Assembly: GCF_030028105.1 (NCBI RefSeq)
Contig: NC_092383.1
Location: 87,501,921 to 87,565,920, forward strand
Length of the DNA stretch: 64,000 nucleotides
DNA from: Mobula birostris
Taxonomy: Eukaryota
Reading direction: 5' to 3'
The position numbers were made by a program, and so were the translations under genes. The notes beneath the pieces were generated by a model. That model saw nothing but the letters and a program-made list of their open reading frames with translations, did not search any database and was not told the DNA's origin. Within the stretch, counting starts at the first letter, position 1; each line of letters begins with the position of its first letter. Of this stretch, positions 575-61,560 are shown in pieces.

Positions 575-1216
575 TATGAAACAACCTGGTTTACCTGGCT
601 GCGTAAATCTTGGAAAGACAACCTCTGGCCCCACCAAACTCATGAGATTGAGCTGTGCTCAATCCCATGTGGATGTTGTGTCATTTGCTACCCTGTTACA
701 AATTAATGCCATGAAGTAACAGGCAGTACACTGCATACGATTAAAGGAATTATATTTATGAATCTTAACTAAAGGGTTAGTAAAGAATAACGAAAAGAAA
801 AGGGCCCATTTTAATTAAACAATCAAATGTGCACAAGTTAGAGCTCATCTTGCATTTCACTGCCACTCACACGCTGGACCCTTGGTCAACGTGAAAGCAC
901 ACACCACCTTTCAAATGTCGCTCGCTATCCATCTCAAACAGTCTCCCACTGGATCGTATGCTACTACCGGTTCTCCCCAGTGTCTTGTCTCTTCATCTCC
1001 TCTCAAACAAAACAAGCCCCAAGCCCAACCTTAGTGTCCCGCACCAGAGAAACCTCCCTTTCAACTGGACCATCCTAATTGGATGGCTCACATTTCTCCT
1101 CATCTCTTATCTTCAACAATAACCTGAACATAAGCTGAAAACAAGCAGCTCCCACAGAACAGCAGAAAATTAAATACATACAGATAACAGTAAAAAATAT
1201 GAACCAGGGCATTAAG
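575..1216 (-). mobile_element. Gypsy-like solo LTR (same family as 58792-60287)
   Basis: Long collinear similarity to 58792-60287 (e.g. gattaaaggaattatatttatgaatcttaactaaagggttagtaaagaataac in both); shares GAGCTCYAAC and TTTAATCGTAT motifs with LTRs at 11544 and 15503 when reverse-complemented. Confidence 0.7.
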
Positions 1217-32800: not shown

Positions 32801-35800
32801 AGAGTCTCAGATGGCGACGAGAGGGTGTACAGGAGTGAGATATACCGACATGTTGAGTGGTGTCGTAGCAGCAGCCTTACACTCAACGTCAATAAGGCCA
32901 AAGAGCTGATAGTGACTTCAGAAAAAGTAAGATCAGGGTACACACATCATTCCTCGTGGAGGGATTAGAAGTGGAGAGAGTGAGCAACTTCAAGTTCCTG
33001 GGTGTTAATATCTATGAGGACCTAACCTGGTCGCAACATATCAATGCAGCTATAAAGAAGGCAAGACAGCGGCTATATTTCATTAGACGTTGGAGCAGGT
33101 TTGGTATATCACTTAAAAGACTGGAAAATTTCTGCAGATGTACCGTGGACAGCATTCTGTCAGACAGCAACACTATTTGGTATGGGGTGGTGGGGAGGGG
33201 GGCTGCTACTTCATAGGGTCGAAGAAAGCCACACAGAGTTGGAAAATTAGTCAGATCCATCACAGGTGCTAGCCTTGATAGTATCCAAGACATCTTCAAG
33301 GAGCAGTGCCTCAAAAAGGTGGCGTCCATAGTTAAGCAGCCCCACTGCCTTCTTCTCATTATTACCATCAGGAAGTAGATACAGGAGCCTGAGGCACCCA
33401 GTCAACAGTTCAGGAACAGCTTCTTCCCTTCTCCCATCCAATTTCTGAATGGACATTGAACCCATGAACACTACCTCACTATTTTTTCTTTTTGCACTAC
33501 GTATTTAATTTAAATATTTAATATACATACACATACACACACATATAGATTACTTAGTAAAGGCATCCGTTAGTCTTGCGAGACCATGGATCTGCGCCTG
33601 GAAAGTCTTCACTCCCCAGGGCGCAGGCCTGGGCAAGGTTGTATGGAAGACCAGCAGTTGCCCATGCTGCAAGTCTCCCCTCTCCACAACACCGATGTTG
33701 TCCAAGGGAAGTGCAAGAGCTGATACAGCTTGGCACCAGTGTCGTCACAGAGCAGTATGTGATTAAGTGCCTTGCTCAAGGACACAGCACGCTGCCTTGG
33801 CTGGGGCTCAAACCCACGACCTTCAGATCATTAGTCGAACGCCTTAACCACTTGGCCACGTGCCCACACATAGATATTACTATTACCGTAATTCACAGGT
33901 TTTTTTGTTCTATATTATCATGTATTGCATTGTTCTGCTGCCGCTCAGTTAACAAATTTCACAACATATGCTGGTGATATTAAACCTGATTCTGATTTAC
34001 GGAAGTATGTTCTCTTCAGTTTCAGGTGCGGTGTGGGCAGAGAAATATCGAAGAGGAGTTGTGGGAAGAGCGATCGCAATCAATTGTTACTATGAAGCAA
34101 AGTACCGCTCACACACAAAGTATTGGTGCCATGGATGGACTCTCCAATGTTCAGTTTTAGTGGAAACAAAGGGGCAACACGGACGGAGTGGACGAGTGTC
34201 AATCACAGAGAACCTGAAACAGAGAATATTTACTGTTACTATGGTGGATCTTCGCTCTGGAGATACAGGATGGTACAGCTGTGGAATTACAACACCAGGT
34301 CTCGATCCGATGTTTCATGTACATCTACAAGTATCTGATGGTAGGTTACTCAGTGATTGATTTTATGTCTTCACTGATGTCAGATCCATGTTTTCTCTGA
34401 GTGGTCATGGTAGCATTGATATCCCAAAGCTCAGCAGCATTGCAGAGTCCTACGAGGAAAATGCAGGAGTTGGGAAACCATATGCATGTTGATCTCACCC
34501 AATCTAATGTTCCACATATACCTAAAAGTATCTGATGGTACGTTTATCAGGGATTGACTTTCTGTCCCCCACTTAAATATCTGATCTGCGTCTTCACTGC
34601 GAAGGGTCAGGACAATTCTCATATTCTGAGGGTCCACTGCAGTGTTGAGTCCTGAGGGGAGTGGGCAGGTGTCGGGGAAACCCCACTCATTGTTCTCACC
34701 CATTGCAGTATCAGACCCACTGAATGGACACCGATTTCCAGTGAGAGGCTTATTACAATTTTCCTACCTCTGAACCGTATGAAATGCCAGTCTGTCAGAG
34801 GTTTGCATTCAGACTAAAAATAATAATCCAGCCATAACAGATCAGAGAGAAACTTATTGCTCATGGGCTAATTACCTGAAAACCATAAAAAGGGAATCAT
34901 TTCCCAGAGCTCAAAAGACTGCATTCAATTCTTACAAAGCAGACCAGTCCAATCCCTGGTCTATCTCAGGGATCAATCACTCATTCCCAACTCCCACCCA
35001 CCTGTATCCCATATATGTGCTCTGAGCCCCCAACCCCAGCACCCACTGACCATCCACTCTGAAGCATCCAGCCTCTTCATCCATGGGAATCAGATTAAAT
35101 GAAATCTGATGAGATCTTGTCCCATCAGAATCCTTTTGTTTTTCTTTCTCCATCTTGCCTTTTTACCCCTTCTTATTCCCCTCCACTGCCCTCATGCCCA
35201 GATTTTTGCCCTCTGGTGCCTAACCTCCTTATTTTATGGTATGGTCTACTGTCTCCTCCAATCAGACTCTTCCTTCTTCAAACCAATGCCTCTTCTGCCT
35301 AAGACCTCCCAGTTTATCACACCATTCTCTTGCCCCATCCCGCCTTCTTACCTTCCACCTCTCACCTGGATTAACCTGTCAGCTTATGCTCTTTCCTCTC
35401 TCCCCACCCTATTATTCAGTCCTCCACTCAATCGTTTCATTCCTAATGATGGGCCTCAGCCTGAAACATCATACATGTATTTTCCTCCAGAGGTGTTGAC
35501 TGATCTGCTGACTTCCTCCAGCTCCTTTGTCTGGACATCCACCTTCCTGAGATTTCTGGGGTTCGCCCACTGCCTCCAAGCATACAGCAGCACCAAGGGT
35601 TTCCCTTGCTGTTGCAGGTCACAGAAACCAAACACTTTCTCCCAAAACCCTCCAAGCATGTGACAGATATCTGACCATTTCTTCCCCTCACATTCAGTTC
35701 TTCCAGGACTCTCTCCAGTTTGTTCCAATTCCCTGTCTCCACTGGAGACTTGCTCCCTGCTGCCGAGAGAGATTGAAACCCTGATTTTCACACTGACTCA

Positions 35801-38800: not shown

Positions 38801-41800
38801 AGCAACGCACACAGAAATTGGCAGTTTAGGCAGCATCTATGGAAGAGAGTACACAATTGATGTTTCGGGCTGAGACCCATTTCTACAACTAAGAAGGAAG
38901 GGGGAAAATGCCTGAATAAAAAGGTGTGAGGAGGAAATAGGGGTTGGAAGGTGATAGGTGAAGCCAGGTAGATGGGAAAGGTCAAAGACTACCCATGAAT
39001 TATAATATGGTGCATCCCACAATATAGTTACATTCATATTACAAAATGAACAGAAGTATTGACCTTAAATGCAATATGCAAACAGCATGTACATATTTAC
39101 ACATCCCCAATACTAATGAAATTGAATATTCCACCATGTACGGTGGGAAAGGCACCAAAAAGGCAACTGAGAGCATGAACATGGCTTAGGACCATTATGA
39201 GAATATACCAGGGAAGACAGAGAGGTGCGTTAACTCAGCTCAAAGACAGCGGAGTGACAAGGCAATGTTTGTGTGTATGTAAATGCACATCTGGAAGGAG
39301 TGCGCCTCGCTTACCGAGTGCTCTCTGTCACACACGCCATAGGGGACTTCTGTCACACGCACCATAGTGGGCTTCTCTGCTGAGATTAGAGCTGGCTTTT
39401 GCAATCATGATCAACGTGGCTTGTCCAAGTCCAGCTGCAAATGCTTGGGTAACACTCACAAAATCTGGGAGGAACACAGCAAGTCAGGTGGCATCTCTAG
39501 TTGTACCGTGGAGAGCATTCTGACAGGCTGCAACACCGTCTGGTATGGGGGGTGGGGGGCTACTGCACAGGACCGAAAGAAGCTGCAGAAGGTTGTAAAT
39601 CCAGTCAGCTCCATCTTGGGTACGAGCCTACAAAGTACCCAGGACATCTTCAGGGAGCGGTGTCTCAGAAAGGCAGCGTCCATTATTAAGGACCCCCAGC
39701 ACCCAGGGATGCCCTTTTCTCACTGTTACCATCAGGTAGGAGGTACAGAAGCCCGAAGGCACACACTCAGCGATTCAGGAACAGCCTCTTCCCCTCTGCC
39801 ATCCGATTCCAAAATGGACATTGAATCTTTGGACACTACCTCACTTTTTTTAAATATACACTATTTCTGTTTTTGCACAATTTAAAACATCTATTCAATA
39901 TACATGTACTGGAATTGATTTATTTGTTTATTTATTATTATTATTTTATTTGTTATTATAATTTTTTTCTCTGCTAGATTACGTATTGCATTGAACTGCT
40001 GCTGCTAAGTTAACAAATTTCACGCCACATGCCGGTGATAAAAAACCTGATTCTGATCTAAAGGGGGCAGTAAACTGTCAACATTTCAGGCCGAGACCCT
40101 TCAGCAGGGAGGTCACCATGCTCAGCAGTGCTTTTCAGATAAAAGAAACTTCCAATCAGATAAACAAAAGACACCTCACAAACTCTTTACAAAGGACTGG
40201 AGTTAAAGTTTTTATTCCATTTTCTTGAAAGTTCAAAGTAAGTTTATTGTCAAGGTGTGTCCATGTCACTACGTACAACCTTGAGATTCATTTTTTTTAT
40301 TGCACATTCACAGTGGGTACATAGAAACACAACAGAATCATTGAGAAACTATACACAAAGATGAACAAACAACCAATGTGCAAGAGAAGACAAAGTACAC
40401 AAAATGCAAAAAATAAATAATAATAAAACAAAAAATAAACAAATAAATAATACTGAGAACATCAGAATCACATTTAATATCATCGGCATACGTCGTGAAA
40501 TCTGTTAACTTCATTGGAGCACTACGTTGCAATGCATAATAATAGAGCAAAAAACTGAATTACAGATATATATATATAATAATTAAATAAATAGTTCAAA
40601 AACAAAACTGAAGAAGTAGTGAGGTAACGTTCATGGGTTCAATGACCATTCAGAAATTGGATGGCAAAGGGGAAGAAGCTGTTCACTGAGTATGTGTCTT
40701 CAGGCTCCTGTACTTCCTTCCTGATGGTAGCATTGAGAAGAGGACATGTCCAGGGTGATGGGGGCTCTGAAAGATGCATGCCTGATAGAGTCCTTGAAAG
40801 TGATTCTATAGATTGTGACTTATTGGATTATAATTCAAGATTTACAAAGGAGAAAAAATTGCAGATGATCTACACAACATTTACACTTTAACCAACATTA
40901 TTATTGCTGATCATTACCTGGTTTGTGGAGCCTTTCTGCAAACAGTTTGGCTGCTGCATTTCTGCACTCCAACAATGTCTACACTTCATTTGCTTGGACT
41001 GCACACATCCTGAGTTCATGGAGGGAGTCGTGTATGCGCCAGATTTTCATTCTTCAGCAATGGTCAAGGGTTAATGGCTGACTGTTTCTTGTCCTCTGCA
41101 CCACAGGTTACCTAAAGTAATTATGCTCAGCATCACTGGCATTGTTCTCATGATGATCTTCACCGGCCTACTTTTGTATCTAAAGTGTAAAAACAGGGGT
41201 GAGTTTCTACTTCTCTTTTCATCATTTTATGATAAACTGTATCTGATCCGACGCTAGCTCCCTAGGCCTGAGTCCACTTAGTAGTAGTAGTATCTGATAG
41301 CTGTCTTCAAAATTACTTGATAGAAAGGTACAAGATAAAAAGAGGCATGCATTGAGTGGATAGCCAGAGACGGTTTCTCTAGTGCAAAAATGGCTAATAC
41401 CATAGGGCATAATTTTAAGGTGATTGGAGGAACTCATAGTGGGATGTTAGAGGTAGATTTTTTATACAGAGAGTGGTGGGCGCATGGAACATACAGCCAG
41501 GGTTGGTGGTAGAGACAGATACATTAGGGATGTTTAAGTGACTTTAGATAGGCACGTGGATGATAGAAAAATGGAGGGGAAGGTTGGATTGATCACAACT
41601 TGTCGGCTGAAGAGCCTGTTCTGTGCTGTGATGTTCCATTTTCTTAGCTTCATGTTCTAAAATGTAATATGATTGCAATTGGATCTTGTCAAATACAACT
41701 CAGAGTTGAGGTGTTCTTCTCTGGGTAAATGAAGCATTAAAGAATAATGGAAGTGCTACTACAAATGGGCGAGAGCTCTTCAAAACATCACATGACACAA

Positions 41801-58483: not shown

Positions 58484-59175
58484 TAACTATATTCTGGAGT
58501 GCATCATATTCTGATTCATGTGTAGTTGTGCTAACTTGCTGTGTAATTAAAGATAGTGTGTCCTAGTGTCTAAACAGGGCAGATCACACTCTGGGAGAGA
58601 GGGAGATCGAGCTACCAGGAGTTCACAATAGACATAGTATATAGCTATAATTCTGTTTTCTGGTTGATATCCTTTTGTAAATATCGGCAATCTTATTTTT
58701 GCAAGCATGATTTTTATGTGCCTAATAAACACCCTTGAACTGTTATGCTGAGCAACTCTAGCCATTCTTTTCTTCAGCCAAAACCTATATATGTGAAACA
58801 CCCTGGTTTCCTTGGCTGCGTAAGTCTAGGGAAGACAACTTCTGGCCCCACCAAGCTCATGAGATTGAGACGCACTCAATCCCACCCCAAACCCTGGTTT
58901 GTGTGGATGTTGTGTCATTTGCTACCCTGTTAAAAATTAATGCCGTGAAATAACAGGCAGTGCACTGCATGTGATTAAAGGAATTATATTTATGAATCTT
59001 AACTAAAGGGTTAGTAAAGAATAACAAAAAGAAAAGGGCCCATTCTAATTAAAGAGTCAAAGGTGCACAAGTTGGAGTTCATCTTGAACTTCTCTGTCAC
59101 TCGCGTGCTGGGCCTGCGGTCAACATGACAGCACACACCACCTTCCCAACGTCTCTCACAGTCCATCTCAAACAA

Positions 59176-60002
59176 CACTTATGCCTACCCTGAAGAAGTT
59201 TAAATCTTCCCTTCGACGGGAGTTCAGTGAGACCCTCTCTCACTGCTCCTCCTCTGTGATCTAGCCCAGCATCTGCAGAGTGTTTTGTGTTTACGATTCA
59301 CTACTCCACTACGAAGTCTCTTCAGGGTATATGGGGTGTCAGCGAGGGGTAGCACCTCTGGTGGGGGAACATGTCGCGTCCTTTTCAAGGCGGTTAGTCC
59401 ACCTTTGGTCCCCACCTGGCACTCAGCTCTCACCTGTGGCTCCCTGTAGCTGTTTGCATGCGATAGCGGCCACACCCCGGGCAACGGCTTCGACAAGCCG
59501 GCTAAGCCAGGTGAGGGTAGCCGACGGGTCTCAAACCCTCGGTGAAACAGGGAGTTGTCTATCCCAGCATGTGAAGACAGACTCCGGCGGATTGAGCGGA
59601 CGAGACCAATGGAAGGTCCAACGGTCAAGGCGGCGGTCTCTGCAAGCGTCGTGGAACGTGTAGAGCAGGACAAGACACAGAAAACGTCCCGGTCATCCAC
59701 TGCGCCTAGTCCCATCTCCAGCCGTCTTGACTCTGTCTTGCCACTGGATCCAGATGGGAAATGGGAAGAGAGAGTGAGGCTGACGCTGCGCAACTCTCCC
59801 TCACTTAAATCCAAATCACGCGCTAGTCTCGACACCATCATTATGGTGTCGAGGTCCTCGTTGACGTTAACGATGGACGAACAACAACAACAACAATCCT
59901 GAAGAAGGTTAAATCCTCTCTTTGACGGGAGTTCAGTGAGACCCTCTCTCACTGCTCCCCCTCTGCGATCTACCCCAGCATCTGCAGACTATTTTGTGTT
60001 TA
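59176..60002 (+). mobile_element. Composite non-coding retroelement: 105-bp direct repeats flanking an RTE-like core with (CAA)n tail
   Basis: 13-bp TSD ccatctcaaacaa (59163-59175 and 60003-60015); repeats 59189-59293 and 59898-60002 with 9 mismatches; (ACA)n at 59879-59896. Confidence 0.8.
59333..59515 (+). ncRNA. HDV-like self-cleaving ribozyme
   Basis: P1 GGGGTGT/ACACCCC, P2 CTCACCTG/CAGGTGAG, P3 GGC/GCC, L3 TCCCTGTA, P1.1 CC/GG, GCAAC, P4 CGGCTT/AAGCCG, J4/2 GCTAA with the C75 equivalent at 59502. Confidence 0.75.
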
Positions 60003-60829
60003 CCATCTCAAACAAACGGGTCTCCCACCGGAATGTCTCCCACCGGAATGTATACTATGACCAGTTCTCCCCAGCGTCTTCTCTCTTCATCTCCTCTTGA
60101 GCAAAAAAATCCCCAAGCCCGACCTTATTGTCCTTCACCAAGAAAAACCTCCCACTATTTGGATGGCACACATTCCACATCTTCAACAATAAACGAAACA
60201 GGCTGAAAAGCAGAACAGCAGCTCTTACAGAGCTGCTAAATGAAATAACTACAGCATAACAGTAAAGAAGTGAACCAGGGCATAACATATGTAACAATAT
60301 TCTTGAGTAAAATTTTTCTCAGTCTAATCCACCCCTTTTAGTCCATTACTGCTGCTACTCCCCTCTGAGAAGACATCGCATTTCGGTTAAGTAAAACAAA
60401 GTCAGCACTAGATGACATTCCTGCTGAATATTTAAACTCATGAGCTTTAATCACCACTCTAAATTACAATTACATTTTTCACATCTGGGCAAAAGGAAGA
60501 TATAACAGTAGATTTCAGATGCCATATTTGTTATCATCTGCATGAAGGGAGGCAAGTCCAGCTGTGGTAAGAACAAATGAGTCTCCAAGCTCTCCCACAA
60601 TGAATGTCGAGGGAATATATCACCAGTCCTAATCAAGATTCACAGCCTGAAATGTTGTGGGTTTCTTTTCCTCCTTAAATGCTGCCTAATCTGCTAAGTT
60701 CCTCCAGCAATTTGTTTATGTTCCTCATGATTTCCAGCATTTGCAGAATCTTGCATTTGATTTTCTGGATGTCTTAAAATATCTGTCTTAAAATATGCTT
60801 AGCGCACTGCTTTACTCTCTCTAAACCTA

Positions 60830-61560
60830 AGACTGTGTGGCTGGGCATAGCTCAAATACCACCTATAAATTTTCTGGTGTTACAGTCATTGTTGGTGGAG
60901 CTTCAGATGGAGGCGAGAGAGTGTACAGGAGCGAGAAAAACCGGCTAGTGGAGTGGTGTTGCAGCTACGACCTGGCACTCAACATCAGCAAGACAAAAGA
61001 GCTGAATGTGGACTGCAGGAAGGGTAAGATGAAGGAACACATACCAATCCTCATAGAGGGATCAGAATTGGAGCGAGTGAGGAGCTTCAGGTTCCTAGAT
61101 GTCAGGATCTTTGAGAACCTGGCCCGGTCCTGGCACATCGGTGCAACTCTGGAAAAGGCAAGACAGCGTCTGTACTTCATTTGGAGTTTGAAGAGACTTG
61201 GTATGTCAACAAAAACACTCAAAGACTTCTGTGGATATGCCATGGAGAGCATTCTAGTGGGCTACGTCGCTATCTGGTACATGGGGCTACTGCACAGGAC
61301 CGAAGGAAGCTGCAGAGGGTCATAAATTTGGTCGGCTCCATCTTGGGTACTGGCCTACAGGGTGCCCAGGGTGTCTTTGGGGAGTGGTGTCTCAGTGAGG
61401 CAGCATCCATCACTGGGGACTCCCAGGACCTAGGGCATGCCCTTTTCTCGCTGTTGCCATCAGGTAGGAGGTACAGAAGCCTGAAGGCACACACTCAGTG
61501 ATTCAGGAACAGCTGCTTCCCCTTTGCAATCTGATTCCTAAATGGTCATTGAACACTACC
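60830..61560 (+). mobile_element. Rex/Babar LINE 3' portion
   Basis: [40 protein letters not shown]. Confidence 0.82.

What the first reader, a model, noticed from the sequence alone, without database searches (positions are those of the whole stretch)
59333..59515. HDV-like ribozyme with an unusual hairpin inserted in L3
Seen: nested double pseudoknot with P1 59333-39/59472-78, an 89-nt structured J1/2, P2 59429-36/59508-15, P3 59438-40/59469-71, L3 UCCCUGUA (U20, C21, C22, G25 equivalents) and P1.1 GG 59479-80. It continues with GCAAC as in genomic HDV, P4 59485-90/59495-500, and GGCUAA as in antigenomic HDV, with the catalytic C at 59502. A 19-nt hairpin (59449-59467) sits at the 3' side of L3, where standard descriptors allow only a few nucleotides, so routine scans would likely miss it. 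Established: RTE-clade elements use 5' HDV-like ribozymes to process their transcripts. Uncertain: the P2/P3 junction has one unpaired or competing position (T59437 against GC 59506-07).
Basis: partly seen in the sequence, partly recalled or inferred. Interest (0 to 1): 0.75.

Follow-up and report, generated by a model that had tools for sequence, protein, structure and literature searches.

The report
Delta-type ribozyme with extra hairpin
The front end of a 565-base stripped-down jumping gene (a LINE that lost its protein-coding part) in a ray genome folds like the self-cutting hepatitis-delta RNA. It carries an extra, conserved hairpin inside the catalytic loop, which makes it a new structural variant of a known arrangement; cutting has not been tested.

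Summary
A relaxed HDV descriptor finds only this site in the window, against about 0.01 chance hits per 64 kb. Rfam finds nothing at gathering score.

The fold heads a non-coding element of about 565 nt (59325/59333-59897). This is the 5' UTR of an APE+RT LINE fused to that LINE's 3' stem-loop and (AAC)n tail. The LINE is RTE-like in organisation; its clade was not tested by phylogeny.

The element is nested in an unrelated repeat (59176-60002, 13-bp TSD). That repeat supplies the flanking "direct repeats".

In DNA contigs of two ray-like organisms, family depth rises about 14-fold at the predicted cut site.

Seven further copies from other assemblies, three upstream of intact ~1070-aa ORFs, keep UCCNNG, the P1.1 GG, the catalytic C, P3 and the 17-19-nt L3 hairpin. 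Compensatory changes occur in P1, P2, P4 and the hairpin. The core is the best-conserved segment (81% against 66-76%).

- The P1 5' strand is duplicated.
- J1/2 is not demonstrably structured.

The scan has already filed this family elsewhere in this genome. HDV-like ribozymes heading LINEs are known; the L3 hairpin is the new part. Cleavage is untested.

The parts
59324..59330 (+). Upstream duplicate of the P1 5' strand ('P1a', AGGGTAT here). Only 5/7 can pair with 59472-78 in this copy. The stretch overlaps the host repeat's own letters (CAGGGTAT), so it may be junction microhomology.
   Evidence: In L004, L005, L001 and L018 the homologous 7-mer is the better or an equal P1 partner.
59333..59339 (+). 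P1 5' strand (GGGGTGT, 'P1b'). The predicted cut lies 5' of G59333.
   Evidence: 7/7 with 59472-78; depth step.
59340..59425 (+). Long J1/2 insert. It is the least conserved part (66% mean pairwise identity), and its folding energy is no better than shuffles.
59426..59436 (+). P2 5' strand (core 59429-36).
   Evidence: L018 shows a compensatory A-U to G-C change, and a C-G to U-A change read by eye.
59438..59440 (+). P3 5' strand (GGC).
   Evidence: invariant in 8 copies.
59441..59448 (+). L3 catalytic loop UCCCUGUA, with the U20, C21, C22 and G25 equivalents.
   Evidence: UCCNNG is invariant. Only the two N positions vary at 10% or more among thousands of contigs.
59449..59467 (+). Extra hairpin inserted between L3 and the P3 3' strand. 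Its loop holds the 6-nt palindrome GCAUGC (59456-61).
   Evidence: It is kept in all 8 copies (17-19 nt). The pairs vary U-A / U.G / C-G and G.U / G-C, and one whole base pair is deleted in 4 copies.
59469..59471 (+). P3 3' strand (GCC).
59472..59478 (+). P1 3' strand (ACACCCC).
59479..59480 (+). P1.1 guanines pairing with C59443 and C59442.
   Evidence: invariant.
59485..59500 (+). P4 hairpin (6 bp, loop CGAC).
   Evidence: Pair 2 is G-C in 6 rows and C-G in 3. The same C-G variant appears in loose-end consensus sequences of three runs.
59502..59502 (+). Candidate catalytic cytosine in J4/2 (C75/C76 equivalent).
   Evidence: invariant in 8 copies.
59508..59518 (+). P2 3' strand (core 59508-15).
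59519..59842 (+). Rest of the LINE 5' UTR kept by the deletion copy. It is non-coding.
59843..59897 (+). LINE 3' end: stem-loop, GGACGAAC, then the (AAC)5AAT microsatellite tail. This is the 3' end of the ribozyme-headed element.
   Evidence: aligned with the 3' ends of six full-length LINE contigs.
59176..59330 (+). Left part of the unrelated host repeat 'Y': direct repeat 1 (59189-59297) plus a 30-nt spacer.
   Evidence: (joint 59327 to 59180; loose ends at 59181; about 14-fold lower depth).
59898..60002 (+). Right part of host repeat 'Y' (direct repeat 2 and the repeat's 3' end).
59163..59175 (.). Target-site duplication of host repeat Y (CCATCTCAAACAA). The second copy is at 60003-60015.
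   Evidence: An uninterrupted paralogue of the target lies at window 668-1120.

Best explanation
This is the 5' head of an ORF-less deletion derivative of an APE+RT LINE. The derivative is about 565 nt and spans 59325/59333-59897. The LINE has RTE-like organisation.

The head is an HDV-like self-cleaving ribozyme, a nested double pseudoknot of P1, P1.1, P2, P3 and P4. Its catalytic loop L3 is followed by an extra 17-19-nt hairpin before the P3 3' strand.

Inferred mechanism, by analogy with R2, RTE, Baggins and L1Tc elements:
1. The element has no promoter of its own and is transcribed as part of a longer host transcript.
2. The ribozyme cuts immediately 5' of its own P1. This gives a 5'-OH RNA that starts at the first base of the element.
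3. The LINE's reverse transcriptase recognises the 3' stem-loop and microsatellite tail and copies the RNA into a new site.

The family carries two tandem copies of the P1 5' strand. This copy can pair perfectly only with the downstream one (cut at 59332/59333). Several other copies use the upstream one, 9 nt further out.

Shown here: the fold, its conservation and covariation, the coincidence of element 5' ends with the cut site, and the LINE parentage.
Inferred: catalysis itself, and what the hairpin does.
For: - The helices are present and the site is unique under a relaxed descriptor: 0.01 hits expected per window.
- Homology of independent copies to this one starts at 59325-59331.
- Summed contig depth rises from 14.7k to 207k (run X1) and from 15.1k to 221k (run X9) between bins 59305-35 and 59336-66. 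Flanks before about 59325 have no consensus.
- L001 continues from the ribozyme into an APE ORF.
- L004 has the ribozyme, a 5' UTR and an intact 1070-aa ORF with Exo_endo_phos and RVT_1 domains. L018 and L019 are the same.
- Window 59843-59897 aligns with the LINE 3' ends and their trinucleotide tails.
- In 8 copies, UCCNNG, the P1.1 GG, the catalytic C and P3 are invariant, and the hairpin is always present.
- Pair counts are 88-89% paired against 20-53% for slid partners. With the upstream P1, 5 pairs change on both sides and the covariation score is 0.131 against 0.086 +/- 0.011 in shuffles (0 of 500 reach it). With the downstream P1 the score is 0.106 (18 of 500).
- The core is 81% conserved, against 66% for J1/2 and 72-76% for the downstream UTR.
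- A sister LINE (L007, ORF 79% identical) has at the same place a plain-L3 HDV-like motif that matches Rfam drz-agam-1 below threshold (26.7 bits, E 0.18).
- The literature records HDV-like ribozymes in RTE and Baggins elements and in deletion derivatives (PMC6765202, PMC3414825, PMC3383444).
Against: - No cleavage assay was done and no 5'-end mapping was possible. All runs available were contigs, so no RNA start could be seen.
- There are only 8 distinct sequences, and they are related, so the shuffle statistics overstate significance. P3 and P1.1 never vary and so say nothing either way.
- No known HDV-like ribozyme that I could find has a helix inserted in L3, so activity cannot be assumed.
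- Rfam gives no hit.
- L001, L005 and L006 have mismatches in P1 or P4, and L002 in P2. Four copies have a 1-nt bulge in P2.
- The exact 5' end of this copy is ambiguous over 59325-59333, because 6 nt fit both the host repeat and the upstream P1 duplicate.
Confidence: 0.8

Rival explanations
1. The motif descends from an HDV-like ribozyme but the hairpin-bearing version no longer cuts. On this reading the conserved region serves as a 5' UTR structure (translation start, protein binding or RNA stability), and element 5' ends are set by transcription start or by another nuclease.
For: A helix in the active-site loop has no precedent that I could find. Rfam models do not recognise it. HDV-like heads are also reported to promote translation initiation (PMC6765202).
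Against: The exact catalytic signature is invariant across copies whose J1/2 is only 55-84% identical: U, C, C and G of L3, the P1.1 GG, and the C in GGCUAA. P1 covaries with its partner, which matters only if P1 forms at the 5' end. Copy 5' ends coincide with the base of P1.
Confidence: 0.12
2. A composite mobile unit: the 108-nt direct repeats (59189-59297 and 59898-60006) are pseudo-LTRs in the style of Penelope-like elements. Alternatively, they are the terminal redundancy of a cDNA made from a longer-than-unit circular RNA of 709 nt with a delta-like ribozyme.
For: Direct repeats lie 709 nt apart and one TSD surrounds the whole 59176-60002. A 242-aa minus-strand ORF spans the unit.
Against: - The LINE-type 3' end and microsatellite tail stop at 59897, before repeat 2.
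- The repeats have roughly 5- to 14-fold lower depth than the ribozyme element. In other copies they follow the spacer directly as a 148-nt tandem unit with no ribozyme between them.
- No independent copy shares the repeats.
- The 709-nt unit is branched, not rod-like (z -2.2).
- There is no ribozyme on the other strand.
- The ORF matches no family.
Confidence: 0.04
3. Chance resemblance to the HDV fold in G+C-rich repeat DNA.
For: Flexible spacers enlarge the search space. The relaxed descriptor does hit shuffles occasionally (2 in 200).
Against: The real site far exceeds the descriptor: P2 is 8-11 bp, P4 is 6 bp, and the GGGCAAC and GGCUAA strings are present. The fold is conserved with compensatory changes in 7 other copies.
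Confidence: 0.01

Closest known systems
HDV-like ribozymes at the 5' ends of non-LTR retrotransposons (R2, RTE, Baggins, L1Tc; Ruminski et al. 2011 as cited in PMC3774820; review PMC6765202)
   Same: Same position (first bases of the element) and same double-pseudoknot topology. L3 has UCCNNG, P1.1 is GG/CC, and there is a C in J4/2. J1/2 is long and variable. The presumed role is the same: releasing the element RNA from a co-transcript.
   Different: A conserved 17-19-nt hairpin sits between L3 and the P3 3' strand. The P1 5' strand is tandemly duplicated, giving two cut-site registers. The host is a cartilaginous fish. No Rfam model detects it.
drz-agam-1 (Rfam RF01787) and the head of sister LINE L007
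   Same: L007's LINE ORF is 79% identical to L004's. Its head has P3/L3/P3' ACC-UCCACGU-GGU, P1.1 GG and CUAA, and a 91-nt J1/2, at the same place in the element.
   Different: L007 has a plain 7-nt L3 and almost no P4. The window's type has the L3 hairpin and a 6-bp P4. The two heads are not alignable in sequence.
Ribozyme-headed non-autonomous deletion derivatives (R2 SIDEs, PMC3414825; NARTc of L1Tc, PMC3383444)
   Same: An internal deletion keeps the 5' ribozyme and the 3' end needed by the reverse transcriptase. The result is non-coding, and the family is very abundant (13-15 thousand contigs per DNA run).
   Different: The parent LINE is of a different clade and is not site-specific. The ribozyme is the hairpin variant.
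Genomic and antigenomic HDV ribozymes
   Same: GGGCAAC after P1 as in the genomic form and GGCUAAG in J4/2 as in the antigenomic form (resemblance from my own knowledge of those sequences). P1 is 7 bp and P3 is 3 bp.
   Different: There is an 89-nt J1/2, the L3 hairpin, and no viral context. No circular RNA, antigenomic ribozyme or delta antigen is present.

Membership tests
HDV-like self-cleaving ribozymes | Nested double pseudoknot: P1, P2, P3, P4 and the 2-bp P1.1, in the canonical order | tested here: met
   All helices are present. 88-89% of cells pair in 9 rows, against 20-53% for slid partners. Double changes occur in P1 (upstream register), P2 and P4.
HDV-like self-cleaving ribozymes | Catalytic cytosine in J4/2 directly after P4 | tested here: met
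   C59502 is present and invariant in 8 copies. Its catalytic role is not tested.
HDV-like self-cleaving ribozymes | L3 with the conserved U, CC (P1.1) and G in the usual spacing | tested here: met
   UCCNNG is invariant. Only the two N positions vary in the family.
HDV-like self-cleaving ribozymes | L3 is a short closed loop (about 6-8 nt) capping P3 | tested here: not met
   A 17-19-nt hairpin plus 1 nt lies between L3 and the P3 3' strand in all 8 copies. This is the variant feature.
HDV-like self-cleaving ribozymes | Self-cleavage 5' of P1, giving 5'-OH and 2',3'-cyclic phosphate ends | not testable with these tools
   Only indirect evidence: element 5' ends and the family depth step coincide with the base of P1.
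HDV-like self-cleaving ribozymes | Match to a curated Rfam HDV-type model at gathering score | tested here: not met
   No hit at gathering score. RF02682 gives 14.1 bits against a gathering score of 44, on the 3' half only. There is no hit for L004, L018, L019 or L005 even at E up to 5.
RTE-clade LINE (parent of the element) | Single long ORF with an APE endonuclease and a reverse transcriptase, and total length about 3-4 kb | tested here: met
   L004: 4.2-kb contig, 1070-aa ORF, Exo_endo_phos and RVT_1. Relatives are on contigs of about 4 kb.
RTE-clade LINE (parent of the element) | Very short 3' UTR ending in a simple-repeat tail rather than poly(A) | tested here: met
   About 45 nt follow the stop codon, then (CAT)n, (TATG)n or (ATT)n. 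The window has (AAC)5.
RTE-clade LINE (parent of the element) | Placement of the RT inside the RTE clade in a phylogeny with reference elements | not tested
   No reference RTE, L2 or CR1 sequences were available from the tools. The database gives no clade names.
Non-autonomous deletion derivative of a LINE | Keeps the parent's 5' and 3' ends and lacks the ORF | tested here: met
   59333-59842 aligns with the LINE 5' UTRs. 59843-59897 aligns with the LINE 3' ends. There is no conserved ORF.

The most novel reading that the evidence does not exclude
The two family-specific additions may be functional adaptations rather than tolerated decoration.

(a) The L3 hairpin presents a 6-nt palindrome in its loop: GCAUGC in 7 copies and ACAUGU, still a palindrome, in L004. 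It could act as a kissing-loop site for dimerisation, or as a switch that couples RNA-RNA or protein binding to active-site folding.

(b) The tandem spare copy of the P1 strand could insure the ribozyme against the loss of a few 5' bases at integration. That loss would otherwise destroy P1 in every nibbled daughter copy.
Probability: 0.15. Interest if true: 0.7.

Novelty: new variant of a known kind. Interest (0 to 1): 0.45.

Why it matters
- HDV-like ribozymes are usually searched for with descriptors and covariance models that allow only a few nucleotides in L3. A conserved helix at that position, in a LINE lineage that reaches thousands of copies in ray genomes and also appears in marine and freshwater metagenome assemblies, means such searches undercount the family.
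- If the variant is active, it shows that the active-site loop tolerates a peripheral helix. This may be useful for ribozyme engineering, and it would help annotate 5' ends of LINEs in cartilaginous fishes.
- It does not change the known principle that LINEs use 5' ribozymes.

Tried and rejected
1. Circular-RNA or deltavirus-like cDNA reading (709-nt unit, flanking repeats, 242-aa minus-strand ORF). Rejected:
   - the fold is branched (z -2.2);
   - there is no second ribozyme;
   - the ORF matches no family;
   - the repeats belong to another repeat.
2. 'This copy came from an uncleaved read-through RNA.' I held this until the LINE 3' end was mapped to 59897. After that the upstream repeat turned out to be host DNA.
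3. PLE-like pseudo-LTR composite. Rejected for the same reasons.
4. 'Structured J1/2'. Not supported.
5. A small ORF1 in the retained UTR. There is no conservation with the short upstream ORFs of L004, L016 and L017.
6. A second protein-word search with an 81-aa piece found nothing.
7. DNA of the Mobula hits could not be fetched because the files are too large.
8. The covariance model R1 found no further copy in the window or in the other loci.
9. Ruminski 2011 and Webb 2009 are not held in the library. Full-text searches for an L3 insertion in HDV-like ribozymes found nothing relevant. 'No precedent' therefore rests on a limited search plus my own knowledge.
10. All sequencing runs offered were contigs, so RNA 5' ends could not be mapped.

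Full report
OBSERVATION

- P1: 59333-39 with 59472-78, 7/7.
- P2: 59429-36 with 59508-15, 8/8, extendable to 11 bp.
- P3: GGC with GCC.
- L3: UCCCUGUA.
- A hairpin at 59449-67.
- P1.1: GG at 59479-80 with CC at 59442-43.
- P4: 6/6.
- A C at 59502 inside GGCUAAG.

I wrote a deliberately loose descriptor (J1/2 up to 100 nt, L3 insert up to 25 nt). It hits only this site on both strands of the window and hit 2 times in 200 dinucleotide shuffles.

Rfam finds nothing at gathering score. With permissive thresholds only the 3' half resembles an HDV-type model (RF02682, 14.1 bits, E 4.5).

The 89-nt J1/2 folds no better than shuffled sequence in three copies, so calling it 'structured' is not justified.

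WHAT THE ELEMENT IS

Other copies were reached in three ways:
- a protein-word search with an accidental minus-strand ORF, which led to L001-L003;
- an exact-pattern scan of metagenome contigs, which gave L004-L006;
- a search with the LINE ORF, which led to L018-L020.

In L001 the ribozyme is followed by an AP-endonuclease ORF. L004 is a 4.2-kb contig holding the ribozyme, a UTR of about 650 nt and an intact 1070-aa ORF with Exo_endo_phos and RVT_1 domains. L018 and L019 are built the same way.

These LINEs end about 45 nt after the stop codon. The end consists of a stem-loop, GGACGAAC and a trinucleotide or tetranucleotide tail. Window 59843-59897 aligns with exactly that 3' end and finishes in (AAC)5AAT. 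Window 59333-59842 aligns with the LINE 5' UTRs. No ORF is conserved.

The element is therefore an ORF-less deletion copy of about 565 nt, made of the LINE head plus the LINE tail. Two earlier notes of this scan describe copies of 555 and 564 nt elsewhere in the same genome, called a manta or other ray there. My nearest named protein hits are from Mobula.

The single ORF, the short 3' UTR and the simple-repeat tail fit the RTE clade. I did not test this by phylogeny.

CONTEXT, AND A CORRECTION OF MY OWN FIRST READING

The ribozyme is flanked by 108-nt direct repeats (59189-59297 and 59898-60006). The whole of 59176-60002 is bracketed by a 13-bp target-site duplication (59163-75 and 60003-15). 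An uninterrupted paralogue of the target lies at window 668-1120.

I first took this for a partial tandem or an uncleaved read-through template. Three results show otherwise:
- The LINE 3' end stops at 59897.
- The repeats have several-fold lower depth than the ribozyme element.
- Contigs of three runs join 59327 directly to 59180. About 150 contigs per DNA run carry the spacer sequence immediately before 59181.

The repeats are therefore two units of a 148-nt internal tandem of a different repeat, which I call 'Y'. The ribozyme element inserted at a unit boundary of Y, replacing about 6 nt and leaving no duplication of its own.

This also answers the sister note that read the locus as a PLE-like composite.

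FIVE-PRIME END

Homology of all independent copies to the window begins at 59325-59331.

In contigs of two DNA runs from two organisms, summed depth jumps about 14-fold between bins 59305-35 and 59336-66. In two runs guessed to be RNA the jump is 6- to 7-fold. Sequences running on to the left of about 59325 have no consensus.

The family is very abundant, with 13-15 thousand contigs laid per DNA run. Contigs cannot show RNA ends, so this is evidence about DNA copy boundaries only.

CONSERVATION AND COVARIATION

Eight distinct copies were compared: the window, L001/L003, L002, L004, L005, L006, L018 and L019. L020 is a partial duplicate of L019. The alignments are A4 and A5.

All eight keep the following:
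- UCCNNG in L3;
- the single U between P2 and P3;
- P3 GGC/GCC;
- the P1.1 GG;
- the C of GGC(U/C)(A/G)A;
- the L3 hairpin.

Compensatory changes:
- P4 pair 2 is G-C in 6 rows and C-G in 3. The C-G form recurs in the loose-end consensus of three runs.
- P2 in L018 has A-U changed to G-C. By eye it also has C-G changed to U-A one position outside the 8-bp core.
- Hairpin pair 5 is U-A, U.G or C-G, and pair 4 is G.U (this copy) or G-C (the majority). In L002, L004, L018 and L019 one whole base pair is missing.

Slid controls pair 24-53%.

The core from P2 to P2' is the best-conserved segment, at 81% mean pairwise identity. J1/2 is 66% and the downstream UTR is 72-76%.

With only eight related sequences these numbers are supportive, not conclusive.

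TWO P1 REGISTERS

The 7-nt P1 5' strand occurs twice, separated by AU (AG in L018).
- In L004 the upstream copy GUGGUGU pairs 7/7 with its partner ACACCAC, a G-C to U-A double change. The downstream copy pairs poorly.
- In L005 the upstream copy again fits better, with a U-A to G-C double change.
- In L001 the score is 6/7 upstream against 4/7 downstream.
- In L018 both copies fit.
- In the window, L002 and L019 only the downstream copy fits, 7/7.

Counting the upstream register gives 5 pairs with double changes and a covariation score of 0.131 (0 of 500 shuffles).

For the family an upstream site, equivalent to 59324, is at least as old.

The six bases 59325-30 fit both repeat Y and the upstream P1 copy, so the exact junction of this insertion cannot be fixed more closely than 59325-59333.

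THE HAIRPIN

In canonical HDV-like ribozymes L3 closes P3 directly. Here L3 becomes the 5' side of an internal loop and a 5-6-bp helix with a 7-9-nt loop is inserted. A single purine returns the chain to P3.

An alternative pairing would use GCU 59449-51 as the P3 3' strand and place a 20-nt insert before P1. It is less likely for two reasons. The hairpin strands covary, and the invariant GCC abuts P1 as it does in all known members.

A sister LINE (L007, ORF 79% identical to L004's) has at the same position a plain 7-nt L3. Its motif matches Rfam drz-agam-1 below threshold (26.7 bits, E 0.18). The hairpin-type heads get no Rfam hit at all.

Its loop always contains a 6-nt palindrome: GCAUGC, or ACAUGU in L004. 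This invites a kissing-loop idea. However, the common family variant C59461U has no listed partner change, so I treat the idea as speculation.

WHAT IS KNOWN

HDV-like ribozymes at the 5' ends of R2, RTE, Baggins and L1Tc elements, their role in releasing the element from co-transcripts, and ribozyme-keeping deletion derivatives are all established (PMC6765202; PMC3774820; PMC3414825; PMC3383444).

I found no report of a helix inserted in L3. Two key papers were not available.

VERDICT

This is an ordinary kind of element carrying a new structural variant of its ribozyme, and the scan has already met the family elsewhere in this genome. Catalysis is inferred, not shown.

Noticed in passing
window 59176-59330 and 59898-60002 (TSD 59163-75 and 60003-15): Host repeat 'Y' is a separate abundant family with a 148-nt internal tandem unit (a repeat of about 117 nt plus a 30-nt spacer). 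Its last 50 nt or so reach about half the depth of the ribozyme element. Y is itself inserted in a third repeat, whose intact paralogue is at window 668-1120.
   Followed up: partly
window 59324-59339; L004 78-93; L018 159-174: The P1 5' strand is tandemly duplicated (7 nt, then AU, then 7 nt). Different copies pair with different duplicates. It may act as a spare that keeps the ribozyme working after loss of 5' bases at integration.
   Followed up: partly
window 59456-59461: The L3 hairpin loop carries a 6-nt palindrome in all 8 copies (GCAUGC, or ACAUGU in L004). This is reminiscent of retroviral dimerisation loops.
   Followed up: no
window 59224-59952, minus strand: A 242-aa stop-free frame runs antisense across the whole element and matches no Pfam family. 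Its best database matches are 'uncharacterized proteins' of Mobula birostris and M. hypostoma (76% identity over half the length). These are probably gene models built on copies of this repeat.
   Followed up: partly
L007 69-214: A related LINE from a metagenome assembly has a different HDV-like head: P1 GGGGGGU, a 91-nt J1/2, plain L3 UCCACGU and almost no P4. It matches Rfam drz-agam-1 at 26.7 bits, below the gathering score of 37.
   Followed up: partly
L004, L007-L020: 1734 relatives of this LINE's ORF (E <= 1e-20) are in the protein collection. Many lie on contigs of about 4 kb from Tara Oceans marine and from freshwater 'metagenome' assemblies. One named hit is from a frog (Leptobrachium). 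So this animal LINE is widely assembled as if it were microbial.
   Followed up: no
window 59843-59879; L004 4135-4175: The LINE 3' stem-loop before GGACGAAC keeps its pairing despite sequence differences between the window and the metagenome LINEs. It is a likely recognition site for the reverse transcriptase.
   Followed up: no
window 60837-61501: Fragments of the C-terminal part of another LINE-type reverse transcriptase (two overlapping frames) lie 0.9 kb downstream. They are unrelated to the ribozyme element, and related pieces occur at 32914-33460 and 39556-39825.
   Followed up: no
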